Origin: Phallusia mammillata | Taxonomy: Eukaryota | DNA: 64,000 nt | Direction: 5' to 3' | Assembly (NCBI GenBank): GCA_965637545.1 | Contig: OZ281494.1 | Coordinates: 7,874,001 to 7,938,000, forward strand | Shown here: piece by piece, positions 2,357 through 43,700 of the stretch | Position numbering within the stretch: position 1 is the first letter of the stretch | How the letters are laid out: every line of letters starts with the position of its first letter | The notes under the pieces: model-generated | What the model saw: the letters and a program-made list of their open reading frames with translations, nothing else | What the model was told of the DNA's origin: nothing | Database searches by the model: none | Translations under genes and position numbers: made by a program

Positions 2357-5300
2357 ATGTCTAGATCTTGCATCAACAATCTTCGTCGAACTGCTATTCT
2401 TCTTTTTGGTCTTTTTTTCCTAAAGGTAAGCAGACTAAACCTTCATTTAACAAAGGTTACTGTGCACAAGTACACGTTAAAAATAGTTTCGTCTTGTTAA
2501 TGCTTAACCCTAGCATTAGGTTTTTCGTATACTATATGATCATACAGAAACTGGTCTATTAATGTGTCTATTAAACTATTGACTTAGCCTAATTCTATTC
2601 GCACATACTGCAACTAAGTTTTGCGTCTTAAGGTTAATTCGTTAAGTAAACTATTTATTCTTTCCAGGTTACTGCAGCTGATCACAACTCTGCGGTGAAA
2701 AATCACTTCACCAATCCCTGTTCCCATCTGGGTGACGAACTGACACGATATTTAGCTGAAGATGATGATGGGATTTTGTGTTGTTTATGTCCTGAGAACT
2801 TTTACTATCATTCAGCCTGCAAGTAAGGATATTAAACCATACGAAACTCGATACCCTTGTTGCATTTTAAAGACGTAATTGCCCGTTGGTTGCAGAAATC
2901 GTGAGTTCAACACCACGGTTTGTTTGCCGTGCCCTGAAGGAACCGAAAGGAAATTTTCCACTGAAGTTCAAGGGTTAGAAATGTGCAAGCCGATTCCTAC
3001 CACAATACCCAAATCGACCACTCCACAGCCACAAAAAATGTAAGCGGTGGCAATTCAAACTCCCTTTAACGCATTTTAGGACAATTATGTTTCCTTTTCT
3101 TTGGGGACACATATTGCTTTTGTCCGTATATTTTTTTCTTTTTTCCATCTAACGCTGGGTTGTTTCACGCGTTTGGTCAGGGGATTGCTTTAACGTATTA
3201 AAATTTACACACATGTTAGGTATTATCCAAATTTGATCCTCCTAAAGTTTGACCATGACTGAACCAGCGGTTCACCCACTAACCCCCAATACTTATTTAA
3301 AAAAAACGCCTGTACTGACTAAAGTACATAATCTAGCAGTTTTATGTTTTGTTGGTTGGTGCAGTATAAGTAGTCTAAAGTATTTTGTAACCAGGGAGTC
3401 GAACCGGAACTGAACCCAAAACCGCGAACCGGTTTGAGCGGTTAATTTCATTAAACCCGAACCGAACCCGAACCGCCAATTACGATTTTCTAAAAACCCG
3501 AACCGGAGTTGAACCCTATTTTTTGTTTGGCGTTGGACCCGAACCGGAACCAGTAAAAATGCAGTCTGTTATATAATTTATACGAGAGATGACACTTATA
3601 GGGCGTGTCAAAAATAACAGTGCGCAGTCAATATTATTTTGGAGTTTGGTAAGGCCAAGTAGATAATGGGTAGAATTAAATTGAAACGAATGAAAATTTG
3701 AACTGGTTTAAAAACCGCTAACCGGTTCGAACCGGATAATTTGCCGAAACCGGAACAAAACTCAAATATACATTTTTAAAGACCTGAACAGAACCCGAAC
3801 CCTTAAAAACAAAACCAAGTAAACGCGAACCAAACCTGAACCCATTTGACAAGCGGTTCGACTCCCTGGTTGTAACTTTTAGTTAGATTCACCCATTTTT
3901 ACCCCTTACCCAGAAATATTCGTTTTTAGGTTTGCCAAGACCTTATGTGCAAAAATGCAAGACCTAATGTGCTGAAATTGTAAACAATTGTTTGTAGTGT
4001 GTTTTTAGTTTAGTATTTAAAAATTTAGCCTGATCGGTCTCGTAGTTACCTTTACAGCCCCGAATATGTAAACCTTCAGGTACTGCAGTACAGAAATCCC
4101 ACGGTAGTGAATCAACGGCGTCCGATTGCGGCGGTTTAATTTAGAATGGGAGGTTTCTGTTTGCTTCACGAATGGTCAGAGGTTTTAATAGGCTTGTTCC
4201 GGTAATTAGAAATCAGGTGTTTAGCGCAGCAATGCTATATGGTTCATTTGGTTAGCATGCGCAACTTTAGTGTAGCGAAGGTTTCATACTCGATAAACGG
4301 AACTTCGCTTTGTAACTTATGTTTCTTAACATAAAAGTCAAAAAAATAACTGGAAGAAAGCCACGGTAAACGGTCATTGTCAGCTTGACCGCTGCATGAC
4401 GAGAAGTCACAAGGTCGATTTGTTGGTGTGGCAAAACCCTGCAGAAACGATTTTTTGTCACAATGTAACTATTATAACTAAATGTAACTGTTTTAGACAA
4501 ATAAATTCGAGAAACAATACGTGTTTTGTATAAAATAGGCAAAATGTTATTGCTGAACACCAAGGACTGCCTGTATGGAAACATGTGTCAAAAGGTCGTT
4601 AAAGGTCAAAAATATCGCACCATTTTTATAGCGTAACCAATTCCCATTAACGTGTCTGTTGGGACCCATTCGTCTTTGCCTGCAAATACAATTATGTGTG
4701 CAGTTCAAACGGTGCGTAGTAAATCGGTAAATAGGATATAGAATATATAAAACGGAAAAATATAGAAAAGCCACTTTTTTAGTTTTATCCTAAAAAAGCC
4801 AACCGGGTATATTTTGCGCTATTGATAACTCCAAATGTACAGTTTTTCCGTTTTTTTGTTTAATTACATTATTAGATCCTTTAAGAAATATTAGCAAAGA
4901 CCGAAAGTTGCCAACAGTAATCAACATTCCTAATAATACTTTTTGGTTACAGAATTTCAACTGACGAACAAGATGGAAAAGACGAAACCGGAGAAAGTAA
5001 ACAACCAGAAAACAGCGTTCCAGGTATAGCTTCAATCCGTCTCGGGAACCAGCAAATGCTTTGTTTGTTATTAGTCTGACTTTAAAAATCCTTGTATTTC
5101 TTACAGGATTGATAATTGGGTTGTTGGTTGCGGTAGTAGGGATGTTGGTGATGTTTGGGTTGGTGGTTTGGTGTGTCACACAAAAACCGAATGTTGTTTC
5201 CTGCTCTGGGGTGAAGGTACAGGATAATTTGTTTTTAAGTAATAAATCACCAAACTGATTTTAAACTCGCTTTGCTAACAGAAAACCATTCCGGATGTCG

Positions 5301-6855
5301 AAGCGGGAGTTGATATGTCCAGCTCATCAGTTACAACTGGGTAAGAAGCTTAAACTAAGCGCAAGTTCTACAACATACTGTTATCATCGCTTTATTTCTT
5401 TTCCAGACACTCATCACAAACTCCAGTGAGCAACAGGCGTGATTCGATTGCGTCAACCACAAGGTTTGTAACCTTATAAGATTTTTTGTCTTAAAGCTTT
5501 GTTGATTTTAAATTTTTTGTTTTTTTAGTGCACCCCAGGAGAACCCAACAAGGAAATACGAGGTAAGGTTTTATCTTTCGTTTGACCTTTGACATACATT
5601 TTTGCAATCAGCCACCATTCCGCTATGATTAAAAAAAATCAGATTAAAAAAATAATAATAACCGCTGTCATCTTGGCGTTGTCGTTTCTCAAAGTATTTA
5701 CAGAGGGTGAAAGCTCACGTTTCTTCAGAACATTTGAGGCTTATGTTATTTAGGTTGAATTATTAAACTATGCGTCACTTTTTGCAGCAAAAACGTTTCA
5801 TAAAGTTCGATCTATTTTGCAGGTGCAATACACGCAATGTCCCACAAACGACCCTGACGTCGTCATAACCGAAAAGGGGGTTACTAACGACGGTCAAGCA
5901 ACACCAGAAAAAGTTAAAGCCATTCCACTAAGAACCGACTACCGAGAATCGAGAACAATTAGCGAAAATCCTACGGCTCCCCGGGTACAACAACCTGTCT
6001 ATAATACAGACGACAGGTTAGGAACACTACCTGAAACGAGCACAGGTCTTCCAGTAATCCGTGGTTACAACATCAACCGAAATGCGAACAGTAAGTAACT
6101 CGATTCGGTCGTATTTTGTCTCTTATAGTAAGTGTATGATCCATGTGTCTCTTGTTTATATAACTAGATCGAAGATCTCTGTAAATAGACTGGTGTAGCA
6201 TAAACTATAAAAACGTAAAATGGCCGCGTTGGCTCCAAAAATACAACATTTATGGTTTGAAAATCGTAATCAAAATTGATAATAATGCAACAAAATTTTT
6301 AGAATTCTCTGTTTTAGTTTCTTATCTGCATCTATTTTTTTTTTTACTTTTTAGTTCAAACGATTTTAAACGTATTCTTTTCCATTGGGACAACCCTTGA
6401 TGTTCCAATTACTGCATTTCAAGTCGAAGGTTTTGGCTATCGTTTCGGTCTGGTCGATGATCAAATTTGTACAGCGAAAAAAAATTCCGGTAAGTGTCAA
6501 AACAACCATTCATGATTTTATAAAACATTTAAGTGAAGTCTTCTGCCTATCGTTGTAAGGATGAGCCATATATAACTCAAGTTAACAATGTTGCTGCAAA
6601 CCTAGCATAAACCAACCAATGGGTATTGAATTATAGTCTAGTAAAGTAATTACTAAACACTACCCAACGCCGGGACTGACTTTTAATTCCTATTTTTTGT
6701 TAGTTACAGAGGGCAATGCCGCGTTTTTGTGCAAAGTTTTCAAACAAATAGTGAGCAAGAAGGGCATCCATCTTGATCTGAACGAAGTGGTAAACTTCTT
6801 CGAAGACAGTGGAATGGGACTGATTTACGATCATCTCGTCCAACAATTGGGGTGA
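2357..6855 (+). CDS. g1: TNF-receptor-like type I membrane protein with C-terminal death-domain-like region (~415 aa, 11 coding exons)
   Basis: Exons 2357-2425, 2668-2822, 2896-3039, 4953-5023, 5107-5216, 5282-5340, 5407-5463, 5529-5562, 5823-6090, 6355-6489, 6710-6855. All introns GT-AG, phases chain, total 1248 nt. Signal MSRSCINNLRRTAILLFGLFFLK; CRD NPCSHL..CCLCPENFYYHSAC|..FNTTVCLPCPEGT..C; TM GLIIGLLVAVVGMLVMFGLVVWCV; DD-like tail ..FLCKVFKQIVSKKGIHLDLNEVVNFFEDSGMGLIYDHL. Confidence 0.85.
3392..3868. mobile_element. hAT-type MITE in g1 intron 3
   Basis: 15-bp TIR CAGGGAGTCGAACCG / CGGTTCGACTCCCTG; 7/8 TSD TTTGTAAC / GTTGTAAC; many subterminal GAACCG/GAACCC motifs. Confidence 0.85.
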
Positions 6856-7819
6856 ACTGGACTGAACACCCACGGGGTATTATTACTCCAAAGTGTTACA
6901 CCTGTGGGGTCATAATATAACTCAATGATGGCAACAAACTCCACAACTGAAGGCGAAACATGGAGGCGCAAAGGTGGCAGAAAAGGTCCACGCGAACGCT
7001 TCGAGCCTTAGAGATCAAAATCTCCTATCTTGTTCAATCCCCAAAAACGAACAAGATTCAGCATCTCGTTCAGATTCAGCTGCTTCCGGGACAAAATGCT
7101 TATTCTGGCCAGGAGCTCTACAAATATTGCTTGATTCTCAATGCGTTTTCTCGTTGAGATGTGTTACTAACGCTATTTGAAAATATCGTTCCTATGTCAT
7201 CTCGTGGCCTGATTTGAATCCAAGAGCAAGTTGGACTCAAAATATCGTTTTTGTTGACGTACATGGCAATCCATCGTGATTTCAAAAACGAAATGTGCTT
7301 CTAGGCCAGCTAACTATACACAATGTGCCTTACGAAATTGCTGTATGTTTATCGCATTTACAATTTTCGTGTGTGTAGAGTGATGTTGTAAACCACTGGT
7401 AGACAAACTTTTCGCACTGCGGACCGACTTTCATATAAGTAGGGATTATGTTTTGAGTTGTAGTTTGTTGGGGCCATGAGAGTTCTACTACCGCATAAAG
7501 GTGCTGCTGTCTAGAGATGTTAGTATAGTCAATTTCATCGGCATCGTGCTTTCTATGTCCACCCCCATATATGGTATTGTTTCCGTATATTCGTCAAACA
7601 AAATCCCCGCCGCCCCTCAATTCTCACTTATCACAACTTTACTGTATTTACATGTGAGGAGTTGTTTTGAGTATTCAAACCGCTGGGCGAGTCTCAAATC
7701 CATGACCGAACCTGGACGGTGTTGGTGCAACACTGGTGCGAATTTTCATGTTTTTGAGGAATAGCTGAAAAATCTTCTGTGAAAGATTTTAGGCATGAAT
7801 TTTTGCTTTTATTCATTGT

Positions 7820-8175
7820 CCTTATTGTTTCTCCTTTTTTCTATTTATTACACAGAAAAATACATTCTTGTGTACGGATTTGCTGAAACCATTAAACTTG
7901 TGAGTGACCGTTTGTTGGGGATTTTTGGAATAAGCTAAGAAATAGAAACAAACAGTGATGCAAACAAATAATGCCCATTTTTCCATGTCAAATACGAAAC
8001 TTGCCAACAATTGCCAAGCACGTTTCCGGGTCAGGTTTACTTTAAGCAACATCAATGTTCGAACCTGTTTTTACGCAGCAAAAACTGATAAAATGGTTAC
8101 TTAACTGGGTTTCGAACTCGCGTTACCCGAGTACGAATGTCTATCAGTACTTCACAACTGCGGGCCACGCGCCTC
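7820..8175 (-). mobile_element. Probable tRNA-derived SINE
   Basis: Minus strand starts GAGGCGCGTGGCCCGCAGTTG (A-box-like) followed by GAGTTCGAAAC (B-box, plus-strand 8109-8117), then an unrelated body and an A-rich end. No full cloverleaf. Confidence 0.5.
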
Positions 8176-8861
8176 AGACATTTTGATCCAAAATTTAACA
8201 GAATCATTTAATGTTACTCGAGCGACCTCTGGCGGACCATGAGCAAATAAAAACCACCAAAACCATAAAAATTACGAAAAAATATATAAACCACCACGAA
8301 TCGACACACAGAATTTTCATTTCAAAACATTCTATTAGTGTTTTGATAAATTAATTAAGCACAGTCTTTATATGATGGCGGAAATATAAAATTATCTCAT
8401 TGGATGATGAAAAAAAGAAGGAAACAAAGAACTGACTGTAGTTCCGCTTTAGCATAATGTTGCGCAACTTTGTACAGCTCGTAACTTCTTCTAAGGTATT
8501 GGTACAACAGATATAGAGGCTAATAGAGAAGTTTTATTATAAAAAGAGAATCTTCATGCAATCAGCATATGATGAACTTGAGGAGTTAAACGATGATAGC
8601 TTTAAAATGCAAAACTTGAGCCCTGTTACGAGGAAAACATATCATGACATTAAATTATAAATTTATTGGAGTGTCTAAAATGCTTGGGTTGAAATATACA
8701 AGCGATTGTGCCTATACGCAAGTTCAGTTGTGTTGCTAAATTATATTTAAAATTCAACCATTGTTTTGCAGCAAGTTTACAATTTGGGAAAATATTTCTT
8801 GCGTGTTCAAGTTATAAGCGTTTGCAGCAGTTTCATTGAAACTGCTTCGAACCTGAGTGGC

Positions 8862-11463
8862 ATGATGTCCATTTCCCACTTCAGAGTTCAACATTGGTGG
8901 CTGCTAATTTTCCTCATGTGTATGGTAAAGGTAAGATTTTGCTATCATGAACAAATTTGTAAAACCTGATTTGTAAGGAACTTTTGGAAACTGAAATTAA
9001 TCAACTGCGATAAATTATCTCGGATAATTTTTTTTACTGGAAACAATGGTTCCTGGTAAAAGAACTAGGTTTAAAAGTTAACAAAAAAAATTAATAGCGG
9101 TATTAGAAGCAAAAAGTAAGTCACAGCCTTATTGGGGAAAGGGGATCAATATATTATTTAAAACACCCAAAAGCAACAAAAAAACAGAAATCCAAAATAA
9201 GCGGAACAAGTTCCCCTTAAGAAAGGTAGCTGTTACACAAAGCCCATAAGGACAGTTACACAAAGCCCATTGCCCCTTTTTCTTGTTTCTTCATTACCTC
9301 GCGATATACTGAACTTCACCTGAGCATGGAAATTTTGACTCGTTCGATTGATTTTCTTTAGTCGTCTTGCAATGCTGTCGAAGATGAACAGACGGTTGTG
9401 CCAACTAAGCCTCCTGGCTTCTCAACTGGCAGTGAAAAGAAACAAGACGCGCCTGATATTTCGACAACACAACAACCAACTCAATCACCCATCCATTGTG
9501 GTCAGCTTTTTTGGACTAATAATAAATCTGCTGTTATCGTTATAGTGGTGACTCTGAATATATGTTGTTCAGTATCACAGAAAAGGCAAGATGACAAAAT
9601 AAAACTGGAGCTCATACCAATTGGTTTCCTAGTTGCAATCATTATCTGTGCACTAGCGTTTATCATTGACACAAAATCTCAAAAGATTGAACCGGTAAGG
9701 AATTATTTTTATGTTCTCAAAGCCAGAATCGTAACCTCATGTCTAAAACGATTTTTTTCAAAGACATTTTGTTGTGATAATTCAATCAGTGTCGATCTGT
9801 AAATGAACTTCCTTTGATGTATAGGCCAACATCACACCGAACATTCCAGTACTGGACAATTCAACACTGAGCACATCGTTTCAGGGGTAAGTAAATGATA
9901 TCGCGAAGAAAAACCTTGCTTCAAACTAGTCAAACCACAATCAATGGCATTGCCAACCACAAATTGTAAAAGTTGGATTATCACTACTTGCTGAAGATAG
10001 TTCCATTTTATACAGTCAAAAACTGTTGGTTTTGCACAATGTTTCTTATGTTAATGGAGCCTAAAAAGTTTCTTATATTAAACAAGCCGCATTTCATAAT
10101 ATCCAAAAAGGATGAGTATCCAACCGAGTGAGATAATTTGCTGAACAATGATTCAAAATTGCTGACAAAAAAGTGAATTTCTTTACTAGACTTAAGTGTA
10201 GAGACCCTTTAATGCGTTTGGAAAGCTTCCCGCAGAACGCTCACCAGCACCCAGGGTGAAAGCCCATGGGTCTTGCAGGAGTTTTTCTAAGCGCTCAATA
10301 ATATATCGAATAGCAACATAACTTCTGATTTTATATTGCTTTGTTATACAGACCAAAACTTCAACCAGAAAGCGATGTTGACTATATATCAGCGGCACAG
10401 GACAATTTCACATCGGAGAATCCCATCAACGAAGAAGCAAGGACCAAACAAAGCCCAGTGGCAACAGTAACAGAAGGGCTGGGTTTCGACAAAGTTGAAG
10501 CCATTGGTGATGCAGAGTTTCCGGCAACAATTCGAGAACCAGGCCCACCAGAAAAAGTTATAGTTAAACAAAGTCGTGCAGAGGCAACAAACAATGGCCA
10601 GGCACCAGAGAGTGACACAGAGAGAAATCGAAAACGTAAGATTTTGATATTTTTTTTAGTGGATGTAAAATACATAGCTGTGGGTATTAAGCATAAAGTG
10701 AACTTCGTTCGGTTTGGCAAAATAAATTCGACCGGTTTTGACCACCGAGCCTTGCAACAGACTTTAAAATACCTTTCAATCCAAAAACAACAGAATGGGA
10801 GTAGTAATGTGTGGATGTATTTGAATCATGATGTTTTTTGCATGGTTTGCAATACAAAGTAGGATCTATTGTACAGTGTGCTAGGGTTGTTTTTTTCCAG
10901 GCAACTAATGTTAAAAACTTTGTTTAACAGTTGACAAAGCGGAAGGTATTTTGCTTCATCTAATGAGCATATCTGTGACGCCCATTAATGTAATGCAGCT
11001 GGCAGCTCACTTCCAAGTTTCGCTGATAAATCGCCAAAAATTGGAAAGAATCTTCGAAAAAGGTATTCTAACAGTTGTCAAACAAAACAAATGCCTATCG
11101 CGTAGTGAACAAACTGCCAATGCACCATGTACATTTCAACAAACCGTAAGCTTGAATATCCGATACGTTAAGCATAAGAAAAACATCGCCGTAACTATCT
11201 TTTATACCTTTACAATTTACATAGTGGTGCGTATATCAAAGCCTTAAGAATGTATGCAAATGCTTTATAAAGCAAGTAAAATACATAAAGGTTACATTTT
11301 ACGTACAGATCCAAATAGTGACATTCTAGTGTACCTTACGAAAGTCCTGAGGGCAATCCGTTCATCGCATGAGGACTTCAATGTTGAAATGCTGATTGAA
11401 TATTGGAAATCCAACAATATGCGTCCACTTGCGTCGCATTTGGAAGAACAAATGGGATGTTAA
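8862..11463 (+). CDS. g2: CRD-less paralog (signal, short mucin-like ectodomain, TM, death-domain-like; ~320 aa, 7 exons)
   Basis: Exons 8862-8930, 9362-9500, 9573-9694, 9825-9886, 10352-10635, 10931-11062 (132 nt), 11309-11463; 963 nt in frame. Signal MMSISHFRVQHWWLLIFLMCMVK; TM LIPIGFLVAIIICALAFII; DD-like VMQLAAHFQVS..FNVEMLIEYWKSNNMRPLASHLEEQMGC. No CRD exon seen in intron 8931-9361. Confidence 0.85.
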
Positions 11464-11921
11464 AGAGTCCCTTCGGCGCTTGGCAACGACTTAAAGCTTG
11501 AAACATGAATATGTTTGTGTTAAACCATTATATTAGAAAAAAATACTAAATTTCAAGTCATTCGATAATATTGTAACGTGACAATGCATGTGTATTAGTC
11601 TGGTAATTTACGGACAATCGGAAGTTTTAGTTAAACCATACGCCAATTTTAGTTAAAAAGATTCTGTTTAAAAAAATATTAAACTAACTACAACCATAAA
11701 GTTATTTTCGCCACATAAAAAATACCATAACTAATTATGTCTTGTACCTTAAATTGCAAATCATGGTTTGTCGGAATCAACAATTGGTTACATGCATTGC
11801 GACGTTATAGTGTGATCGAATGACCATCACCATTTTTTAGTTCCAAACATATTCTTTCGAGCTTTATGTTCGCCAAGCATATTTATATCAAGTCCAAGTT
11901 TTCAAGTGCCGAAGGGACTCT
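11464..11921. mobile_element. MITE with ~19-bp TIR, starting directly after the g2 stop codon
   Basis: AGAGTCCCTTCGGCGCTTG ... CAAGTGCCGAAGGGACTCT (1 mismatch); no clear TSD, superfamily unassigned. Confidence 0.75.
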
Positions 11922-16295: not shown

Positions 16296-19200
16296 ATGCT
16301 TTTTGCAAGATTGTTATTAGTCTTGCTTTTACTATCCTGCTTTGCACAGGTAAGAAAACAATTCTAAAGTTTTTTTATGAAACGTTTCGAAACTGCATTA
16401 TCTACATACACAAAAACAAGATTCTAATTCAGTAAACCACATTTGTATGTTTATCTAAATAAAACATAGTAATGCTCTGTACTGTGTTGTTTCACAACAT
16501 TTTTTTTCTAAACCGCCCAATATTGTAAAAACTTAACAACAGGGGCAGTTGGGACAGTTTGTTTACACTTGAATTAAATTGTATGTGGTCATTGAGTCGA
16601 CCATTTTTTTCTGTTCACATGATCGATAAAGATTGAACAGTTGGTTAATTCGATGTTCTTATTACTTTAGGGTACGTTGGGGGTCAATAAAGATGTGAAA
16701 AATGCAGCCATAACCGACCCTTGTCCCCATCTTCTCACCAGTGGGGTGCGGCCATTATTGGAATTTTTTGACAAAACAGGACAATCTATGAAATGTTGTG
16801 GATGTCCCAAGGATCATTTTGTTCTAAAGCCATGCAGGTAGGTTTGCTACCAACATTGGAACATTTTTCTAATGAAATAATCAAAACAGTTAGTGTGAAG
16901 TGACAAAACGGATTTAATGTCATTTTCGTAATCCTACTACCGTACCAGCTAGTCTTAATTTGACATAGCATACACTAGAGTTCACGTTTGTTATTCCTAA
17001 GGATGATAAATAAAAACCATGCTGTTTTCAGTGACGGATTCATTTCTGAATGCCGGTCATGTCCTCCTGGAACGGAGTTGAATAAAACTGTACATGGCAG
17101 TGGACTAGAAGGATGTACACAAATCCCAACAACAGTGCCACCGGAAGAAATTTCCGATGATCAAAGGTAAGTTTCGCAATCGTCGAAGTAGCGCACAACC
17201 TTTTTGTTATTGTCCATGTTCACTGAGTTCAAACAAAAGGTCTACTGGCATGTATGTTGAGCCCCTGGCAGCATGTAATAACTCCGGTACCTTGTTGAAA
17301 CAAACGGCCTTCATAAACCGTTTTGCCCGCCGATAATGAAACATAATCAAACAAACGTTTTACCTTCTATCACCAACATGACAACGTAGCTTATCGAAAT
17401 AGTTGCATTCACTATTGCACCTGACAATAACAGTTATAAGTAACAAATAAGTAACAAACATCGCATCTATATGATACAGAAACAATGATCTAGAAAAAGA
17501 TGATGACAGAACTCAACCACCACAAACAGGTCAGGTCGATTCCAAACCTCCAGGTAAGTTATTTGTTTTTGTTAACCATAACCATATATCACCTATTTCA
17601 TCATGGCTAAAACTTATCCGTTTTTACAGAGAAAGACAAAATCACTAAAGAAAGTTTCACACACCCCGGATATTACTTTTTGGCTGGAGTCTTGCTAAGC
17701 AGTGTTGCTCTTGTTGCTGTTATTTACAAGCGAAATGTCCGGTCAGGTCCCATACAGGTAGTGCATGGCGATACAACTCAAAATGTTTATAGAATAAGCA
17801 CTAAATCTGCTGTATTACAGAAAGATGAAACTGAGATTTGGTCACCAAACCAAACACGCTTAATGTAAGTTAAAAAACAAACAAACACTTGTGTGCGACG
17901 GAGTTGCGACTTACTTAGCTATAAGTCCTTATAAACCGTTGGTTTTTCTCTCGTTTTATGTTAAAATCTGTTAAACCTGCGACTACGTGAGCTAAATTTA
18001 ACTGACGTGCTTTCCAAAACTAATCTCTACGCTGTGTTTAATATAATTTACACGCAAAGGAACTGGAGAGAAGACAACACTGTCAGCGTTGGATCTGAAG
18101 CGGACGGTCAAAATTTCGAACTACAGCTCGAAGACGAAACAACCCCAGCTTTGGGGTAAGTAATCGTCACGCGATACATAATAGGTCATGTAGAACGACG
18201 ACAGTTTTTTATGAAAATAAAACTCTGCACAACTCCGTCTAGTTTCGTGGTGAGCCAGACACCCATAAAAGTTAAAAGAAAAACAAAAGCTCGGGTGTTA
18301 AACCAAATGGTGTGGTTAAAGTTGCGATGTTCTTTTAGCCCAGACCAACCGTTTTCCCCCTATTTTTCATATATCATATTTTTTTCATATAGGGAAATAC
18401 ACGAGCTTAACTTAACTTCCGTGCTTTTCAAAACCGACTTATTTACAATCATATTAACTACGTTCAATTCATTTGCAGAGCAAGGAGCTCGAGAGAAGGC
18501 GTTAATGGTAGCGTTGGGTTCGAAGCGGACGCTATAAATTCAGATGAGGCGGTCCTAGATATGAGGTATAAAGCGTAGTAAACGCCATGCGATACTTACT
18601 ACGTCATGCCTTTCCATATACCATAGTTTTGACTTTAAAGCACGTTTAAAACAGTTTCAACATAGGCACAAACTTGCATAACCATTCACTTACTATCCAG
18701 TAAAAGTGGTCTAACACTACAACAGTAATGAAACCGTGCAAATTTTTAAATATTAATCCTAATTATACAATGTTAAATTTTATTTTCAAATATAAAACAG
18801 CGAAGACGAGGAACCTGAAGCAACCAAAGAGAAACTTCACACAAAAAATGTGAAGAATGATGATGAAGATGCAACCGTTCTATCTACAACACACGAAGAG
18901 CCGGAAAACCCTAAAGATAAAGCTACTCCCGATGGGGACCCATCGGCTGTTATCCGCGAACCACCAGTAAGACCATCAGTGAGCAATTCCGATGATCTGG
19001 CTGAAGACGGGCCTACGGTTGAAGGACAGGTGCCACAGCCGATACAACAAAGGGGTGTTGCATCTGCTAGTAACATGGTAGGAAGTGCAAGCCGGATTGA
19101 GCATGGTGGTGGTGGTGCTAATACCGGCCCACCCATTCAAAACATGACTCGAAACGCAAGAGGAGTGGAAATTGAAAGACGTAAGTTTAATTTTTTGCCT

Positions 19201-19978
19201 ATTGTTTCCACTGAAAAGAAACCAATTTAATGATGGAGTAAAAGAATAAATTATTTTGTCTGCTGCAAATTATCTTCTAAAAATGGACAGTTTTTACGTA
19301 CAATCAAAACAACACAGCGATAACCAAAATTTTTGTCACTCCAAAAAAAAAATGGAAGTGTACAAACGTTTCAATACGAAAAAACAGATTCCAAATTTTG
19401 GGAGCTGCTAACACTGATAACTGCATATAGTTATTTGTAGCAAATGATATTTTATATGCTCGAACTATAATGTTCAGAAACAGCAACAAAGAAAACTTGT
19501 CAACGGCTTTTATATTATTGGCACCATAAATTTAAAAACTTGTGCCTAACAGGTAACTGTTTGACAGAAACATATTTCATGAACCATATGTTTTTAGTTA
19601 TGCAACTCGAGGACCTCGTGATACATTCAAAAACGACTCCGGTATCCCAAAATGACTCGGTTAAGGTCCTAAGTCATTTTCAAGTGCCAGAAAACATCAA
19701 GAAGACGTTGGCAAATGAGTACAAAAATGGTACGTGGTTTGTCCGTAGATCGATTTTTTTACTTACTTGAATGAAGGTTGAAAATGAATGTCGAAGACTG
19801 ACAGCAGATCTTTCATACAGACAACGATCCCTTGACGTACCTCTACAAGGCTCTAAAAGAAATTCGCAAAAACTCGTCCGACATTACAGTCGAAATACTC
19901 ATCTCATACTGGATGAAGAACGGAATGAGAGAGATGGCCACATATGTGGCTGGCGAGATGGGTATCACTGCCATTTAA
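16296..19978 (+). CDS. g3: TNFR-like death-domain receptor (~484 aa, 11 exons)
   Basis: Exons 16296-16349, 16671-16837, 17032-17166, 17480-17553, 17630-17757, 17821-17864, 18060-18155, 18479-18565, 18801-19180, 19598-19729 (132 nt), 19821-19978; 1455 nt in frame. Signal MLFARLLLVLLLLSCFAQ; CRD DPCPHL..KCCGCPKDHFVLKPC|..ECRSCPPGT..H..C; DD-like ..ITVEILISYWMKNGMREMATYVAGEMG. Confidence 0.88.
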
Positions 19979-29100: not shown

Positions 29101-31566
29101 CCATCTGTGTAAATTTCTGCCAAATCCATCAAACATTTGATGGAAAAACGTGTCGGACAAACTTTGGGGGAAAAATACCCATTTTAGGGGACTAGCGGGG
29201 TAAATACCAAAAACGTGGGATGCACATTTACATAACTATATCCATCATCTGTTTAAATTTCATCAAACATTTGATGGAAAAACGAGTCGGACAAACTTTG
29301 GGAAGAAAAAAAAGAAGAGAAATAACAAACAATTTGAGTAAAATCACTATGTAACCCCTTCAGGGAAGGGGACACATAAAAATAGCTATGTACTTACGCA
29401 ACTAAAAGTCACCGGGTACGCCAATCACTTTTCGCATATTATGCCAACAGAAACCACCACAAACAAACCAGTGAAATTCCTAACACAGACCTTAACACGA
29501 CTCCACCAACACAAACACAACAGCCAGATGCACTACCGCCAGGTTAGTTACGTTATTAAAAGAAAACAAACCAGACTTTTTTTTAACAAACCAGACCAAA
29601 AATTGCCTAAACTGATCTATCTACACAGAGAAAGACAAAACCAAGATTGTTGTCGATTGGGTTACCATCATTTTTATTGTTGCTGTTGCTCTTGCTGTTT
29701 TGGTGACTTTTGTCGTAATTAAGTGGAAGGACAGGTTCTGTCTCAATCAGGTAGAAAACAAATCTCTGAGTAATAATACAGAGCAATAAAATCCCTTTTT
29801 TACACACACAGAATGGTGTCGCAGCGGACAAAGCACCCGAAAGGTAAGCAAAAAGCCTAAATAAATTAAACGAAGTGCGATTATGAATAATGGGTTTACT
29901 TTGTATTAAGGCGTAAGTGCAAACTACTTAAAATTTAAAACCAGTAGAAAAACATAGTATCTTCTGTGTGCTTGATGTTCTCATAATTTCTCACGTTGAA
30001 AATGTTGAACATTCTTTTTCAGAGTTGAAGGTTCAAGAGAAGACATAGAAACCAGTTTTAGTCTGAAACCTGACGAAGCTAAACCTCCAAACCAGGTCGG
30101 ATGCGCCAGTTTCAACACACAAGACGAAACCACACCCGCTTTGAGGTAAGGTAAACAACAGGCCCCATTGAATGTGGAGTCTCAGTTCCTCTTGCAATGT
30201 GCATAACAGTTTACCTTGTTTGACTTGTTTCCTTACCTGAAATCTTATGCGACAAATTAGTTTTAAACAACAGGGTTTAATACTTATCTAAGTAACAGAT
30301 TTGTTTTTATTTATATACGTGCTTATCTTTTAAATTAACTTAAAAGCTTGAGAAAATTTATTTATATACGTGCTTATCTTTTAAATTAACTTAAAAGCTT
30401 GTAGCATATTTGTTTCTGCACCGAAACACAATGTTGAACAAAAGTCGTCTTGTAAATCCACATCCTCTTCTAAGTTTAAAACAACTGCATTTTTTACAGC
30501 AAGAGCAAGGCACCAAAGCCAACCAAAGAAAAGCTTTCCACAAAAGCTGCAGAGGAGGAAAGCGAACAATGTGAGTCTCTGCTTGCCACAACACACGACG
30601 AGCCTGCATCCAAACTCAACGCCATTGGTGATGGGGATTACTCTGCCCTTATCCGCGAACCGGATCCACCAGAAAGACTATCAGTGAGCAATTCCCATGA
30701 TCTGGCTGGAGATGGGCCTACAGCTGAAAGACAGATGCCACTACAGATCGAACAAAGGGATGGTGCATCTCTTGACATACCAGGACATTCAAACATGATA
30801 GATATGGAGCATGGTGGTGCTGGTAATCCTGGACCACCAATTCAAAGAGGTTCTGCACAACTACAGATGGTACAAAACACAAATCAGAACATAAGAGAGC
30901 GGGAAATTAAAAGGCGTAAGTAAAAACCAATTTAATGATTGGGCAATAAATAAATCTTATGTCAATTTTCAAGTATTTTTTCACGTAAAATCTGAAGAAC
31001 AATATACAATGGCCAAACCATGTCAGTTTATTGCAAAACACAAATTGTTAATTTTCAGTTGAACGAGCCGAAAATGACGTGCTACATTCCAAAACCACTC
31101 CGGTTTTTCATTATGACGTGGTAAGACTTCTCAGTCACTTTCAAGTGCCAGAAAACACGAAGGAGAGGTTGGCAAATGAGTACAATAATGGTACGTGATG
31201 ATTTAGTCGTAAATCTATTTACGGAAAATTTTTGATGCAAAACGAAGAAAATATATGCAATGTCACGGTTTGAACTATGAAACGTGTTTTGTATTTAATC
31301 CGTCTTCACTGACAAGAAGTTAAAAAAATCTAAATTCGTGTCAATAAACATAAGTAAAACGCTATACGCTAAAAAAATGCGTTGACTAGTAACAGATTTT
31401 TCATCCAGACAGAAATCCTTTGTTGTACCTCTACAATGCCATGAAAGAAGTTCGCAAGAACTCAGACAACGTTACGGTGGAAATACTCATCGAATACTGG
31501 AGGGAGAATGGATTGACAGAAATGGCAAGATATGTCGCTGACAAAATGGGCATTAATATCGCTTAA
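26163..31566 (+). CDS. g4: TNFR-like death-domain receptor, closest paralog of g3 (~480 aa, 10 exons)
   Basis: Exons 26163-26234, 26331-26491, 26668-26802, 29451-29542, 29629-29750, 29812-29843, 30023-30145, 30500-30915, 31059-31190 (132 nt), 31409-31566; 1443 nt in frame. CRD NPCPHL..QCCGCLRDQYVAVPC|..TCMPCLSGT..H..C; TM WVTIIFIVAVALAVLVTFVVI; DD exons about 62-64% identical to g3 by hand alignment. Confidence 0.87.
27327..27779. mobile_element. Nested Charlie-like MITE
   Basis: TIR-like CAGTGCTTCTCAAC / GTTGGGAACCACTG; flanks do not match, so the TSD is lost. Confidence 0.7.
27862..28452. mobile_element. Nested hAT MITE containing a (TA)n tract
   Basis: TIR CAGGGCT..AAAC / GTTT..AGCCCTG; perfect TSD GTCTAAAA; GGGGTCGCG subterminal repeats; TA microsatellite ~28237-28268. 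Confidence 0.88.
28936..29382 (+). mobile_element. Helentron/HINE (DINE-1-like) non-autonomous element, tentative
   Basis: Two internal copies of a ~130-150-bp core (GCGGGGTAAATA..GGGATGCACAT..AAATTTC..ATCAAACATTTGATGGAAAAACG.GTCGGACAAACTTTGGG) and a perfect 3' hairpin CCCCTTC-AGG-GAAGGGG at 29355-29371. This architecture resembles HINEs; subTIRs were not identified. Confidence 0.5.
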
Positions 31567-35983: not shown

Positions 35984-38806
35984 ATGCGTTCTGATATTTG
36001 GTCTAAAATCGTTTTGATGCAGTTGCTTGGAAATGCATTTGCACCATTTCTTGTTAAGGTTTGTTACTGTAAAAAGACGACATTTAATCGGCAAAAACCA
36101 TCGCCTGAGGCAACCAAATGTTACTTGTCTCTTAATGATATGTTAAAAACGGCAAATAAAAACAGCAAATAAAACAAAACTAAAGTTAAACTTGCTACTA
36201 CTTAACCTTTGTCAATACGTTGCAACTTTGACATTTTATTACTACCCGCTACTTAATCATTTTCATTTCAAAGTTCCACAGTGTTTAACATAGCGGACCT
36301 TTTACCTTAAAAAAAGGTTTATTTTTTGTTTACTGCTATATTTGCAGGTCGTCGCTGAAGCAAACCATGTCAGGAAACTCTACGGCAACGAGACAGAAGT
36401 TACATCTGGCGCCACTAGCGGAATTCACTTTCCCGAAACATCGACACTGGGGTTTGACTCTACGCGTTATTTTCACGATTGGCGTGACGAAACTGTTTCT
36501 TTAAAGTAAATCGCCACTATATAGCATTTGCACGCCAGTGATACAGTACATCAGCATTGCACGCCGGTGATGCAGTACAGTATTTCTTGCACCCTGGTGG
36601 CTAGTTAGTCGAGCATGCTTTCGATCAGAGAAAACTTTGCGTTGTCGTGATGCATGTTATATATTTCCTTAGAATGGTTTTACACACACAAACAGTGACG
36701 CAATTAGTGTGAAGATTAAACGACTAACCAAAAAGCGTTGTACTAATGCATGTTCTACAAAGACTAAATGTTTTGATATTGTTAAGTGAGATGCAGAATA
36801 AGATGTCTGTATTATGGACTGGCAACAGAAAAACAGTCTACAACTTAAATGTTTGCTCAAAAATATTCGATGCTTGCGTTAAACATTTCGTCTCTGTCAT
36901 GCACAATCGAGACTCGAAAAACAATAAACCATGTTATTTGTTTTACAGAAATCATGCCGTCCAGTCCATAACCAACAAAGATACAGACCAAACTGATGTG
37001 ACAAGCGCAGCAACAATCACAAACACAGATAACCTGACTACCAACGGAACATGCCTGTGTCTTAATGATGCCAACTTCAGAGAGACTTTGGAATACTTTT
37101 TTCACAGTAAGTATTTTAAACAAAAGTGTTAACGCTTGAACAATAAGTCCGTGTAACGTAATTTCTTAAAGAGTAAAAAATAACTTTCAATTCTTCGCCA
37201 CAATTGTGTTCAGCTTGGCAACAAGTAAAACTGCAAACTTGTCATTGAAATTGCTTTAATACATCATATTGTGGCAACCAACCGTGGTCAAAACCACATA
37301 CTACCAGCGTATAATACCGCGTGTATTTTATTTCCGAAACCGATCGCAAAAAGAAGACTACAAAAAAAGCAAAATATTTTCAGGTTTTGTGCGACCCAAT
37401 TGGGGAAAGATCGCAATCGTGCTTCTCATGGTGGCTATGCTTGTCAGCGGTGTATTTCTCGCCATTTACAAGTTCTGCAAGAAACGCGAATTGAAACGGG
37501 TAGAAATTTTACTTAAAACTTCAACATCAAAATACTAGCACTCTCGCACTTTCTTTTTACATGCAGAATCGAACATTGACAGACTCGAACGGACAATCTG
37601 GGACGCAAAACAAATTTCCCACCCAGAGTTTACACGGGACAGTCCAAGAGGCTCCAACAAAAACGTCAGTTTTTACCGTAATTTACTTGTAAAGCAACAT
37701 TTGACAAAGTCTTCGATGTACACACTTACATGCAAAAAAATAATAATTAAAGCCACATTTCAATTACGGTTTATGTGTTATCAGGCCTATCGAATCATTC
37801 GTCGGGACAAGTTTGCCTGGTGTGAGCAGTCGAGTTTGTAACTCTTCTCAAATACTGGTTGGAACAGAAGTTGATTTCTCAGACACAAGCAAGCTGCTAG
37901 CAGATCCCTTTATGGATCAGGCACCACCTGCTCATCCACAAGATTGGACCAACCAAGAACGTTCAGAGGACGAGAACCGATGTTTTGCTGCGGCCACGTA
38001 CCCACAAACACACGAACCAGTTATGTCTATGCAAAGCTTGATAGGTGCAAGTAGGTTACTTTTATATGAATTTTAGAAGCCTCCGGTTCATTCTAAATGA
38101 CACTTTTTGCTCATCGCATTGCCAACAAAGTTGTTGCACTGCAAAAAAAGACCACTACATTGTGCATTAAGTAAAAAAAAAATAATGTTTGTGTTTTTAA
38201 ATCATAAAGCTAAACGTTTACAAATTTTACGAAGACCCCATTGGTAGTATTTGCAAATTTATTTACAATTTACTTCATCATGATTACTTTCATGTAGTGA
38301 AGGTTTTGGAGACTTGCCTGTGGGACCTTGAAAACTCAACAGTTGTTGTTACTCCTGAAATGACCAAGAAATTTGGACAAGCTTTCGACCTTTCGGGAAA
38401 TCAGATTGCGACTTGTGAAGCCAATGCAAGTAAGTAAAGTCTAAGGGAGAAATATCACATTGAAAAAAGGGTTTGATGTTGTCAACGTAATAGTACTCTT
38501 GGTAGGTCGTACTATGTCGGAAATTTATTTTTAATAGAATAACACATGATTAGTTTTGATATAGAATGAAATATACCTCTAACAAATATCTTGGACTTGA
38601 CAATTACCCAAAACTGCATGTATTCGTTTCTAGAGACCAACACCGAATTCTTGGTCAACGTCTTTAAATTCATTCACAACAAGCGTGGACGAGATTTTAC
38701 TCCAGAAATGATGGTAGATTACTTCAAATCAAACGAGCTACGTTTGCTCAGCCAAGTTTTGGAGGCAGCTCTCAACGATAAAGGATATGTACTGTACAAC
38801 CAGTAG
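35984..38806 (+). CDS. g5: CRD-less paralog (Ser/Thr-rich ectodomain, TM, death-domain-like; ~390 aa, 8 exons)
   Basis: Exons 35984-36058, 36348-36505, 36949-37106, 37384-37499, 37567-37664, 37785-38050 (alternative donor 38044), 38298-38429 (132 nt), 38634-38806; in frame. TM IAIVLLMVAMLVSGVFLAIY; DD-like ..EFLVNVFKFIHNKRGRDFTPEMMVDYFKSNELRLLSQVLEAAL. The signal exon and exon-2 donor are the least certain parts. Confidence 0.78.
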
Positions 38807-40729: not shown

Positions 40730-43700
40730 ATGCTGATCGTCAAAATGTTAGTTACTTTGTCATTGATTATGGTAAGTTTAAACTGCAGTCTTTTATCACT
40801 CAAAATACTATTTTACACTTACACTTTCTTCTTTTAGGCAGCCAACCTCAAAGACATTCCAGATCCTTGTAAGCATTTGGAGGCACGCGAAGGTGGGCGC
40901 AAACTTGTTGAAATGTACAAAAATAATGTTCCGAGGCAATGTTGTGGATGCCCTCCTGGATTTTATCTGCACACTGTCTGCGAGTAAGAAAGTGTTAAAA
41001 AAACGGACCGATTTTGGCAACATCATGAACTGTAGTCCATATCATAAAACATTCAGTTTGTATAGAAATAAAACAATAAAAACCTGTAGTTTTGACCTTT
41101 AATGTTTTTAGGTGTCTATGCATTATAAAAATAATGGCATTATTCTGTAATTTACAACTTGGTACATTTGTTTCAGAAAAGGAAATTTTAATTCAACAGT
41201 GTGTAAAAAATGCAAGAATGGAACTTTTATTGATGAAAAGGCCCATGACAAGAGGAACTGTATCACTCTTCCTAACAAATCAATCACAACACAAGCTCCA
41301 TCCTTTGAAGAAATGTATATTTCTTTCTTGTAACAAGTAGTTTATTTTCTGATAAACCAGGACAAAAGCATTTTGTGATTTAATTCCATGAAAACTACAC
41401 TTTAAAAGTCCTTATTTGTGCAGAAATTCCAATATCAACTCACCAGTGTGTGTGGAAAGTGAAAACGGAAATTTTATTTTTAAAAAACCTCATGACAAAA
41501 GAAGGTGTACCCAGACAACGCAAGCTTCATTCTCAGCAGAAATGTACAACAACTTCTCTATTTTTCAATTTTGAACAGTAGTTAATGCTCAATCAACAAA
41601 ATAGTCATACACTTTTTGACATTGATTGTTTACACACCACAGCAAAACCTAACACTTATTTTTAATGCAGGATTTCGCAATATGTTACACCAAAAATGAC
41701 CACAGAAAAAATTATTGAGTCTGTCACTGAGTGGAGCTTGGGTATAAGTAAGTTATACCTTATACCAAAAACAGCACACCAAAAATAATGCTATTTTATT
41801 TCTTTAGATGATGGGATTGTGCTATTGCTTGGTGTGGCCTTCGGAAAGTTTTTACTACTAATAATTATACAATTTTCAAAGAAAAAAGAAACCACATGGA
41901 AAGATGTTTTTCATAACATTATTGTTTGCTGCAACAAATGTGACAAGGTTTGGTTAACACATTTAAATGTTAAGAGTTAAGATTTTGTTAATCAATGTGC
42001 ATGAATTTTCAATATTTGCAGTGCTTTGACAGGTTGAAAACTGTTTTAAGTACCAAATGTCACATAGGGAAGAGTCTGTGAAACATTACAGAATTGGCTG
42101 ACAGCTTTATGTCACTTATGGTGTTGATCTAAGTAAGTTATAAAACAAGCTATTAAACACACAGGTTCAAAACAATAAGGAAGACGGTGAACCTGAAGAA
42201 AACATCCGATTAGCTGAAAATCCACCAGACTACAGGTATGTAAAGATGAAGTTTTCAGGCAACCTATCACACAAGTGGTTTAATTGCTTCACATGAATAT
42301 TAACTTACAGACCAGAACCTTTTTTTGAATCACAATCATCATCACTACCAAATGATACTCATAACACAAGCAGCTTATCAACTCTAAAAAATACTAGTGT
42401 TGCTGAAGAAAGACAAGATGCTATTCAACTTGGAGCCCAACCCTCAGATGAAACCATACCAAAACAACCCATAGCTGTTCGTGCAAAAACAAAATCTGAA
42501 ACTACTATCAAAGATGCTGTGCCTGAAAAAGAATGTGAAATTTTGATATGTAAGTGAACGAAAGATATACATAGATATATCTGCAATAGTCTTGGACAAT
42601 CAAATTAACTGTGTTGGACTCTTGCCTGTGTGTATGCTTGGTATAGGCACTGTCTTATAAACTTATCAGTAAGTATTTCCCCATGTGCTCAGACACCGAT
42701 TGGACAGCAATTTTGTTCCTTTTTTAGACAGGCTTTGACTTTTGATTGGCAAAATGTAGTCATATTTCCCCCAATTTAAAAAAGAAGTGTTTTACAAGAA
42801 GAAATCGTACAGCTTTCTGTTCAACTTAAATTTTAAATTTGCAGTTATGTTTTTTGCAAAACGCGCTGCAGTAAATAGGCCTGCTGCACTTTTTATATCA
42901 AAAAAACATGCTATCTTTGTATTTTAGTAAAAAGGGTGCTGGCAAGTATTGCCCACAAACAACCACACATTCTACTTGAACAAAAGGATGCATTTAATCT
43001 TGCAAGAAAATTTGATATTGGAGAAATTACTTGTTCACATCTTTCCACAAAACATGCAGGTACCTTTCCATCAATATTTTACAAAATGTCCAATCTAATT
43101 TAAACACTTCCTTAATACTAACCAGTTTTTGTTTTTTTAAAAAAAAGCATTTTTAATGCTGCATTTATTCGATTGTAAGCCATATCTTATAAAGTTGTTT
43201 TACCCTACAGTTTGTGCGGCTTCGATGGAGGCTTATAATTGAGGGCAGCTTATATTTTATTATCATACCCCTATTATTTCCATGTCCCTGCATTTTAAAT
43301 TAGTTCGCTTTCATTTTTTGCATGTACGCATTACACAATTGTTTGCCTGACTAACAAATGTTGACAAAAAATAACACTAATTAGCAACAAAAGGAAGTGT
43401 TACAAAACAATAGAGAGTAACAAGTGACTTACAGTCGAGGGCGATTGACATTATATTGTTGCAACCTTAAAGTTCGACTTACAATTAAATGCAGCTTACA
43501 ATCGAGTAAATACTTTTTTTCCGTTTTTAATACGAGTTAGCAAAGCTTATTTTCGAATCCAACACAGTAAGGTTGGTGTGGTGTATTACATTCACCACCC
43601 AAATTGAAGTTATAGCATAATCCAATTTAGCAAAATACCAAAAGTTAAAAACACTCACATATTAGGTGAAAGTTTACTGATGTGTGAACTTTTGTGTGTT

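What the first reader, a model, noticed from the sequence alone, without database searches (positions are those of the whole stretch)
8862..11463. g2: death receptor with no cysteine-rich ectodomain
Seen: the signal exon splices to one 139-nt Ser/Thr/Pro-rich exon and then the TM exon, so the mature ectodomain is only ~55 aa. Its DD (HFQV, VEMLIEYW..N.M..(L/M)A....MG) is clearly of the g3/g4 type, and the TM contains LIPIG. Known: mammalian NRADD/NRH2 is a p75NTR relative lacking CRDs that modulates its partner, and Fas TM trimerisation uses a proline-containing motif. Inferred: g2 may be a ligand-independent helper, inhibitor or constitutive signaller for g3/g4.
Basis: partly seen in the sequence, partly recalled or inferred. 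Interest (0 to 1): 0.72.

Follow-up and report, generated by a model that had tools for sequence, protein, structure and literature searches.

The report
Sea-squirt death-receptor paralog lacking ligand-binding domain
One gene in a sea-squirt cluster of eight TNF-receptor-like genes keeps its membrane anchor and its death domain but has lost the outer cysteine-rich, ligand-binding part. This resembles vertebrate NRADD/p45, but no transcript of it was found and its role is untested.

Summary
A 7-exon, all GT-AG gene at 8862-11463 (+) gives an uninterrupted 320-aa type I membrane protein. It has a signal-like exon, one 139-nt stalk exon, a TM exon with LIPIG, a cytoplasmic linker and a two-exon C-terminal domain. 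No cysteine-rich-domain (CRD) exon or relic lies between the end of g1 (6852) and the TM exon.

The C-terminal domain groups with g3/g4 (support 95/99). Pfam does not see it. The g3 copy folds confidently into six helices whose best solved matches are FADD and Fas death domains (Z 12). I could not fold g2 itself.

Intron positions and phases match g3, whose protein is on public record. Exon 2 replaces three g3 exons in frame, 79 codons shorter. The g2 death domain changes no faster than g3/g4, and a cytoplasmic motif is shared by all three. This argues against long neutral decay.

No RNA run holds g2, and it is absent from the protein databases. The helper, inhibitor or constitutive-signaller idea therefore stays untested.

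The genome appears to be Phallusia mammillata. The family is lineage-restricted. The scan had already noted g5 and g7 of this cluster in the same window.

Verdict: a real, probably maintained CRD-less variant, analogous to NRADD/p45 but not a member of that family. Interest is moderate.

The parts
8862..8930 (+). exon 1: start codon and signal-like peptide (23 codons, phase 0 end)
   Evidence: ATG, hydrophobic core WWLLIFLMCMV and GTAAGA donor. Like the g1 first exon it ends in Lys and is spliced in phase 0. The other haplotype carries S3Y and H11L plus two silent changes and no stop.
9362..9500 (+). exon 2: 139-nt stalk exon, 39% Ser/Thr/Pro, two Cys, no CRD pattern (phase 0 to 1)
   Evidence: It replaces the g3 exons of 167+135+74 nt, which have the same net phase; the difference is 237 nt, or 79 codons. 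No Pfam hit.
9573..9694 (+). exon 3: juxtamembrane segment and TM helix (LELIPIGFLVAIIICALAFII), phase 1 to 0
   Evidence: Hydrophobicity peak. The phases match the g3 TM exon (128 nt, 1 to 0), and the juxtamembrane (Q/E)(D/K)DK(I/T)(K/T) segment is similar.
9825..9886 (+). exon 4: short cytoplasmic exon, phase 0 to 2
   Evidence: GT-AG borders. The phases match the g3 exon that follows its TM exon (44 nt, 0 to 2).
10352..10635 (+). exon 5: cytoplasmic linker
   Evidence: Similar to g3 18796-19227 and g4 30480-30920.
10500..10553 (+). conserved cytoplasmic motif AIGDAEFPATIREPGPPE inside exon 5
   Evidence: Aligned with the g4 motif AIGDGDYSALIREPDPPE and the g3 motif PDGDPSAVIREPPVRP. Function unknown.
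10931..11062 (+). exon 6: first half of the death domain (helices 1-3, contains HFQV)
   Evidence: Homologous to g3 19597-19728 and g4 31058-31195. In g2 the exon starts in phase 1 (x|TT Leu codon) and ends on a split G|AT Asp codon; tblastn shows g3's exon bordered at the same protein residues, Leu389 and Asp433.
11309..11463 (+). exon 7: second half of the death domain (helices 4-6) and the stop codon
   Evidence: 44% identical to g3 and 31% to g4 over this half. The own-genome profile search scores it at E 6e-21. The other haplotype has 5 replacement and 3 silent changes here and no stop.

Best explanation
g2 is an intact paralog within a lineage-restricted sea-squirt cluster of eight TNF-receptor-like genes, and it appears to be maintained by selection. 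Its CRD exons have been replaced in frame by a single short stalk exon.

The product is a type I membrane protein. It has an ectodomain of about 55 aa that is probably O-glycosylated, one TM helix, a cytoplasmic motif shared with g3/g4, and a death domain of the g3/g4 type.

Without CRDs it cannot bind a TNF-type ligand in the canonical way. Its most likely mode of action is therefore ligand-independent. It would enter or cap death-domain assemblies (and perhaps TM assemblies) formed by its closest relatives g3/g4 or by their adaptors, and so tune their signalling. This is how vertebrate p45/NRADD tunes p75NTR.

Shown: the anatomy, the absence of CRDs, the affinity of the domain with g3/g4, and the death-domain fold of the g3 copy.

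Inferred: the splicing, expression, folding of the g2 copy, any partner, and the direction of the effect.
For: - All seven exons have GT-AG borders and the 320-codon frame is open.
- In g2 versus g3 the TM and post-TM exons have matching phases, and the two death-domain exons are bordered at the same protein residues. The g3 protein P0001 is on public record and is 96-100% identical to the window in its well-aligned exons.
- Exon 2 replaces three g3 exons with the same net phase, exactly 79 codons shorter.
- No CRD relic lies upstream or in introns 1-2.
- In the death-domain tree, g2+(g3,g4) has support 95/99 and g2 has a terminal branch near zero.
- g2 has fewer lineage-specific changes than g3 or g4 in 11 of 12 relative-rate comparisons. 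It also matches the outgroup consensus more often: 19 columns against 13 and 12.
- The motif AIGD..IREP.PPE is kept in g2, g3 and g4.
- The g3 domain folds with mean pLDDT 92 into six helices. Its top solved matches are FADD, Ankyrin-G, RIPK1, TNFR1 and Fas death domains, at Z 12.0 to 8.9 and Foldseek probability 0.99. Atlas neighbours are Death-domain clusters.
- The g3 ectodomain resembles TNFR_c6 clusters.
- Both haplotypes keep an open frame at all listed variants.
- Precedent: p45/NRADD binds p75 through its TM domain and death domain (PMC4122344).
Against: - No RNA evidence. No RNA-type run holds g2 words, and no contig from the two RNA-type runs I laid touches g2. One of them does cover a g1 exon.
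- g2 is absent from a 1.84-billion-representative protein library that contains g3 and g1- and g6-like products of the same species.
- The listed haplotype differences in coding sequence are 7 replacement to 5 silent, a high ratio.
- Pfam Death and TNFR_c6 are not met by any exon or by the full-length paralogs.
- The g2 domain itself was not folded, and no binding test was possible.
- Relative-rate differences are individually not significant (p 0.04 to 1).
- g3 and g4 have no TM cysteine or proline to mirror those in g2.
Confidence: 0.42

Rival explanations
1. g2 is a silent, truncated duplicate on its way to becoming a pseudogene. Birth-and-death turnover in the tandem array removed its CRD exons, and the still-open frame reflects recent loss of function rather than selection.
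For: - No transcript in any indexed RNA run or in the two laid RNA-type runs.
- No protein record.
- 7 replacement against 5 silent differences between haplotypes, 5 against 3 in the last exon alone.
- A second gene of the cluster (g5) also seems CRD-less, so such truncations arise easily here.
Against: - g2 is old. Its death domain is only 29-33% identical to g3/g4, and no intron or flank similarity is left. Even so, all 12 splice sites and 320 codons are intact.
- Its death domain is the slowest-changing member of its clade.
- The cytoplasmic motif is conserved.
- The replacement of the CRD exons is exactly in frame.
- The available RNA runs are few and small, and their tissues are unknown.
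Confidence: 0.27
2. g2 is functional but acts on its own. With an ectodomain of only about 55 aa it would be a direct gamma-secretase substrate or a constitutive oligomer. It would release or cluster a death-domain tail without any ligand (a constitutive signaller) rather than modulate g3/g4.
For: - Short ectodomain, single TM helix and intact death domain.
- The TM helix carries Pro and Cys residues that the TM segments of g1, g3 and g4, the paralogs I read, do not show.
- From my own knowledge: type I proteins with very short ectodomains, such as BCMA, can be cut by gamma-secretase without prior shedding.
- Gamma-secretase susceptibility of NRADD is debated in the literature (PMC8686249 abstract).
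Against: Nothing here tests cleavage or self-association. The shared g2/g3/g4 cytoplasmic motif and the sister relation of the death domains fit joint action at least as well.
Confidence: 0.15
3. The gene model is incomplete. The real transcripts start elsewhere and bring in CRD exons, for example through distant 5' exons or g1-g2 read-through, so the protein is an ordinary CRD-bearing receptor.
For: Splicing of exon 1 to exon 2 is unverified by RNA. CRD exons of g1 lie 6 kb upstream on the same strand.
Against: - g1 has its own TM, cytoplasmic and death-domain exons and a stop at 6852.
- The 2-kb spacer and introns 1-2 hold no CRD-like frame.
- Exon 1 looks like the first exons of g1 and g3: signal-like, with a phase 0 donor.
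- Exon 2 starts in phase 0, as the first exon requires, whereas the g3 exon before its TM exon starts in phase 2.
Confidence: 0.08

Closest known systems
NRADD / NRH2 / p45 / PLAIDD (vertebrate p75NTR paralog)
   Same: Type I membrane protein derived from a TNFR-superfamily death receptor. It has a short ectodomain without ligand-binding CRDs and retains a TM helix and a death domain. p45 acts by heterodimerising with its CRD-bearing relative through the TM domain and the death domain (PMC4122344). The absence of CRDs in p45 is from my own knowledge.
   Different: - There is no sequence membership. No TNFR_16_TM or Death Pfam hit was found on g2 exons or on full-length paralogs.
- The best solved matches of the family's domain are FADD and Fas death domains, not p75.
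- The loss is independent and lies inside an ascidian-specific tandem cluster.
- g3/g4 have no TM cysteine to pair with the g2 Cys95.
- Expression and binding are unknown.
TNFR-superfamily death receptors (Fas, TNFR1, DR4/5, DR6, EDAR, p75NTR)
   Same: The paralogs g1, g3, g4 and g6-g8 share the overall plan: signal peptide, CRD-like ectodomain, one TM helix and a C-terminal death-domain fold. g2 shares everything except the CRDs.
   Different: - g2 has no CRD.
- The family's CRDs and death domain fall below Pfam thresholds.
- The family is confined to this one cluster in the genome.
- It has five true relatives among 1.84 billion representatives: three products of the same species and two short metagenome fragments.
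- A published census counts 3 TNFRs and none with a death domain in Ciona (PMC4979521).
g5 of the same cluster (35984-38806)
   Same: A second gene of the array that seems to have a cysteine-free ectodomain followed by a TM helix and a death domain.
   Different: Its death domain is not sister to that of g2, so its CRD loss would be independent. I did not model it fully.

Membership tests
TNFR-superfamily death receptor | Extracellular TNFR-type cysteine-rich domains that bind a TNF-family ligand | tested here: not met
   The g2 ectodomain is one 46-codon exon with 2 Cys and no CRD pattern. It has no Pfam hit. There is no PF00020 hit in the window and no CRD-like frame in 6853-9700. The paralog g3 resembles TNFR_c6 only weakly (Pfam E 0.41; Atlas 0.80 and TM about 0.5).
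TNFR-superfamily death receptor | Type I single-pass membrane topology | tested here: met
   Signal-like N-terminus and one strong hydrophobic segment at residues 83-101. This is from sequence only; I ran no dedicated signal-peptide predictor.
TNFR-superfamily death receptor | Cytoplasmic death domain (six-helix death fold, DD subclass) | tested here: inconclusive
   - Pfam Death is not met on g2 exons or on full-length paralogs.
- The homologous g3 domain folds at pLDDT 92 into six helices. Its best matches are FADD at Z 12.0 (rmsd 2.6, 91 residues aligned) and other death domains; the nine top rows are all death domains.
- g2 aligns to g3 at 33% identity, and its only gap against g3 falls between helices 3 and 4 of the g3 model.
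- The g2 domain itself could not be folded, because a spliced sequence has no reference.
NRADD/p45 (p75NTR-related, CRD-less) | Sequence relationship to the p75NTR TM, juxtamembrane region and death domain | tested here: not met
   No TNFR_16_TM or Death hit in the Pfam scans. A p75-like cluster is only one of three equally good structural neighbours of the g3 domain (TM 0.65-0.68). The PDB searches put FADD and Fas first.
NRADD/p45 (p75NTR-related, CRD-less) | Heteromerises with its CRD-bearing relative through the TM domain and the death domain | not testable with these tools
I sent no complex prediction.

The most novel reading that the evidence does not exclude
Sea squirts, which domain censuses report as having no death-domain TNF receptors, carry a private, fast-diversifying cluster of TNFR-like receptors. 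The death domain of these receptors is invisible to Pfam. Within this cluster, CRD-less members (g2 and, independently, g5) have evolved repeatedly as ligand-independent regulatory subunits that co-assemble with their CRD-bearing sisters. This would be a convergent reinvention of the vertebrate p45/NRADD-p75NTR arrangement.
Probability: 0.2. Interest if true: 0.62.

Novelty: new variant of a known kind. Interest (0 to 1): 0.4.

Why it matters
If g2 is expressed and binds g3/g4, it would be an invertebrate-chordate example of death-receptor signalling tuned by a truncated paralog. It would have arisen independently of vertebrate NRADD/p45. It would also be a handle on how ascidian TNFR-like receptors signal at all.

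The wider point may matter more. This family's death domain escapes Pfam, although structure prediction recovers it clearly. Published counts of zero death-domain TNFRs in Ciona may therefore undercount. Repeated CRD loss in one small array could tell whether such truncations are selected regulators or by-products of gene turnover.

Tried and rejected
- **Pfam scans.** I scanned every g2 exon and the CRD and death-domain exons of g3/g4. Nothing was significant.
- **Six-frame genome searches.** Whole-genome searches with PF00531 and PF00020 gave no hit inside the window.
- **Half-domain profile against PDB sequences.** Only noise.
- **RNA evidence.** Two run searches (whole locus and exon 5 alone) found only two DNA-type holders. 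Laying X1, X2, X3 and X8 on 5700-11650 gave no joints and no RNA contig on g2.
- **g1 CRD exons belonging to g2.** Rejected, because g1 has its own TM and death-domain exons and its own stop.
- **Relic CRDs in the spacer and introns.** Protein and DNA alignments are indistinguishable from shuffles.
- **Origin of exon 2.** It might be a CRD-a 5' end fused to a stalk exon, or a stalk exon extended past a lost donor (TKPPG followed by GGC instead of GGT). The similarity is low-complexity only, so I make no claim.
- **Orthologs in other species.** The exhaustive profile search gave only products of the same species and two short metagenome fragments. Their contigs L001-L004 hold a g5/g8-like last exon only.
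- **Genomic context of P0004.** Not on record.
- **Left out.** I did not run Pfam, AlphaFold or a complex prediction on the contiguous g2 death domain or on the whole g2 protein. The spliced sequence has no reference and I did not type it into those tools.

Full report
**What is there**

Reading 8400-11900 and assembling the exons gives a seven-exon gene on the + strand.

| Exon | Coordinates | Length | Content |
|---|---|---|---|
| 1 | 8862-8930 | 69 nt | signal-like peptide |
| 2 | 9362-9500 | 139 nt | stalk |
| 3 | 9573-9694 | 122 nt | TM helix |
| 4 | 9825-9886 | 62 nt | short cytoplasmic exon |
| 5 | 10352-10635 | 284 nt | cytoplasmic linker |
| 6 | 10931-11062 | 132 nt | death domain, first half |
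| 7 | 11309-11463 | 155 nt | death domain, second half, and stop |

- Every intron is GT-AG, and the 963-nt CDS has no internal stop (320 aa).
- The protein starts with a signal-like hydrophobic core.
- It continues with a 46-codon segment that is 39% Ser/Thr/Pro and holds two cysteines.
- One strong hydrophobic segment follows at residues 83-101 and contains LIPIG.
- Next comes a linker of about 125 residues.
- The mature ectodomain is about 55-58 residues.

**Is the lack of CRDs real?**

The window holds eight paralogous genes on the same strand.

- g1, directly upstream, is complete. Its CRD exons are at 2650-2823 and 2879-3040, its TM exon at about 5001-5255, and its cytoplasmic exon at 5754-6095. 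Its two C-terminal-domain exons end in a stop at 6852. The g1 CRDs therefore do not belong to g2.
- The 2-kb spacer and g2 introns 1 (431 nt) and 2 (72 nt) contain no CRD-like frame. tblastn with the CRD exons of six paralogs gives only noise.
- Local DNA alignments of 8931-9572 against the corresponding parts of g1, g3 and g4 score no better than shuffled sequence.
- The whole-genome PF00020 search has no hit in the window.

**Support for the splicing model without RNA**

- The protein of g3 is on public record (P0001, named from Phallusia mammillata). It is 96-100% identical to the window in the well-aligned exons.
- Mapping it gives these g3 exons, with start and end phase: 54 (0-0), 167 (0-2), 135 (2-2), 74 (2-1), 128 (TM, 1-0), 44 (0-2), and so on.
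- g2 has 69 (0-0), 139 (0-1), 122 (TM, 1-0), 62 (0-2), and so on.
- The TM exon and the exon after it agree in phase.
- In g2, the first domain exon starts with a Leu codon split x|TT, and an Asp codon split G|AT spans the junction between the two domain exons. tblastn places g3's exon borders at the same protein residues, Leu389 and Asp433.
- The single g2 exon 2 replaces three g3 exons (376 nt) with the same net phase. It is exactly 79 codons shorter.
- I could not establish where exon 2 came from. Its resemblances to stalk segments of g1 and g3 are low-complexity only.

**What the C-terminal domain is**

Pfam does not recognise it. There is no hit on single exons, on the full-length products of g3 or of g1- and g6-like genes, or in a six-frame genome search.

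Structure-based evidence points the other way.

- Atlas neighbours of g3 residues 392-484 are all Death-domain clusters. Structural TM scores of 0.65-0.68 go to an IRAK-like kinase cluster, a Death-domain protein cluster and a p75-like TNFR cluster, all of which carry Pfam Death.
- An AlphaFold2 model of g3 385-484, built with a 16-row family alignment, has mean pLDDT 92 and six helices.
- Foldseek puts FADD and Fas death domains first, with probability 0.99 and TM 0.67-0.74.
- An exhaustive structural search gives FADD at Z 12.0 (rmsd 2.6, 91 residues aligned), and the top nine rows are all death domains. They include Ankyrin-G, RIPK1, Pelle/Tube, TNFR1 and Fas; CARDs follow.
- The g3 ectodomain resembles TNFR CRD clusters weakly but consistently.

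The family is therefore reasonably called TNFR-like death receptors with a cryptic death domain. g2 aligns to g3 at 33% identity over the domain, and its only gap against g3 falls between helices 3 and 4 of the g3 model. I could not fold g2 itself, because its domain is split by an intron and a spliced sequence has no reference.

**Does the g2 domain group with g3/g4?**

Yes. A maximum-likelihood tree of the two-exon domain from the eight genes plus one allelic product places g2 with (g3, g4). Support is 95/99, so no further test was needed.

**Function or decay?**

In favour of maintenance:

- g2 is old. It is only 29-33% identical to g3/g4 in its best-conserved domain, and no flanking or intron similarity is left. 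Yet it keeps 320 open codons and all twelve splice sites.
- Its terminal branch in the tree is near zero.
- In 11 of 12 three-way relative-rate comparisons it has fewer private changes than g3 or g4. These differences are individually weak (p 0.04 to 1).
- It matches the outgroup consensus in 19 columns, against 13 and 12 for g3 and g4.
- A cytoplasmic motif, AIGD..(F/Y)..A.IREP.PPE, is shared by g2, g3 and g4.

Against:

- No RNA-type run holds g2 words, for the whole locus or for exon 5 alone.
- When four runs were laid on 5700-11650, the two holders behaved as DNA: continuous contigs and no joints. One RNA-type run covered only a g1 exon (5821-5991), and nothing covered g2.
- g2 is absent from a library of 1.84 billion representatives that contains g3 and g1- and g6-like products.
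- The second haplotype of the sequenced animal shows 7 replacement and 5 silent changes among the listed coding variants. None is a stop.
- Over much of the locus only haploid depth was laid, so the other haplotype is either more than 10% different there or lacks that part.

**Scope of the family**

- A profile of the last exon finds only the eight window genes and two weak extra hits in this 240-Mb genome. One lies 8.5 kb past the window.
- Only five true relatives appear in the representative library. Three are from the same species and two are short fragments on marine metagenome contigs.
- A published census lists 3 TNFRs, none with a death domain, for Ciona intestinalis (PMC4979521). The Pfam blindness seen here may explain such counts, but I did not test Ciona.

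**Comparison with the known**

The closest functional analogue is vertebrate p45/NRH2/NRADD. It binds p75NTR through a TM cysteine and through its death domain and so blocks p75 dimers (PMC4122344).

g2 is not a member of that family.

- It has no sequence signature of p75-type TM or death domains.
- The domain's best structural matches are FADD and Fas.
- g3 and g4 have no TM cysteine or proline to mirror the g2 Cys95 and Pro85.

Another gene of the cluster, g5, also appears CRD-less and is not sister to g2. Such losses therefore recur here.

**Verdict**

The functional reading cannot be decided.

My best account is a maintained, ligand-independent, death-domain-bearing subunit that modulates g3/g4-type signalling (confidence about 0.4). 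The rivals are a silent decaying duplicate (about 0.27), an autonomous or gamma-secretase-released signaller (about 0.15), and an incomplete gene model (about 0.08).

This is a new variant of a known kind, of moderate interest. Earlier notes of this scan on the same window (g5, g7) describe the same cluster.

Noticed in passing
window 2650-6852 (g1) and 40730-43927 (g6): The public Phallusia mammillata proteins nearest to g1 (P0004) and g6 (P0002) are only 41-75% and 74-100% identical per exon to this genome. The g3 protein (P0001) is nearly identical. No better-matching locus exists in the assembly. This suggests very deep allelic divergence or presence/absence variation in the cluster.
   Followed up: partly
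window 5700-11650: In the two DNA runs most of this stretch is covered at haploid depth only. A second haplotype is laid only in patches (8780-8906, 10828-11022, 11373-11470), where it differs by 5-13%. The other haplotype of the g1-g2 interval is either more than 10% divergent or structurally different.
   Followed up: no
window 35984-38806 (g5): g5 also seems to have a cysteine-free ectodomain exon (frame 36294-36506) before its TM exon (frame 37260-37535), together with an intact two-exon death domain. Its domain is not sister to that of g2, so this would be an independent CRD loss.
   Followed up: partly
G000:C1:7946524-7946649 (8.5 kb beyond the window end) and G000:C5:6793999-6794076: These are weak extra matches to the last-exon profile of the family (E 1.8e-4 and 9.3e-4). 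They may be a ninth cluster member or a fragment.
   Followed up: no
L001:10001-10222 (also L002-L004): Marine metagenome contigs carry a g5/g8-like last death-domain exon ending ...LEAYLRC. The gene caller read through a TGA after it. These contigs probably come from another tunicate-like eukaryote. No other family exon was detected on them.
   Followed up: partly
whole family (g1-g8; P0001, P0002, P0004): Pfam Death and TNFR_c6 both miss this family even on full-length proteins. AlphaFold2 plus structural search recovers a clear death domain. Domain censuses of ascidian death receptors may therefore undercount.
   Followed up: partly
G000:C1:8545407-8581928: A run of weak TNFR_c6-like six-frame hits lies about 0.6 Mb downstream of the window. 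It may be another CRD-bearing gene cluster.
   Followed up: no
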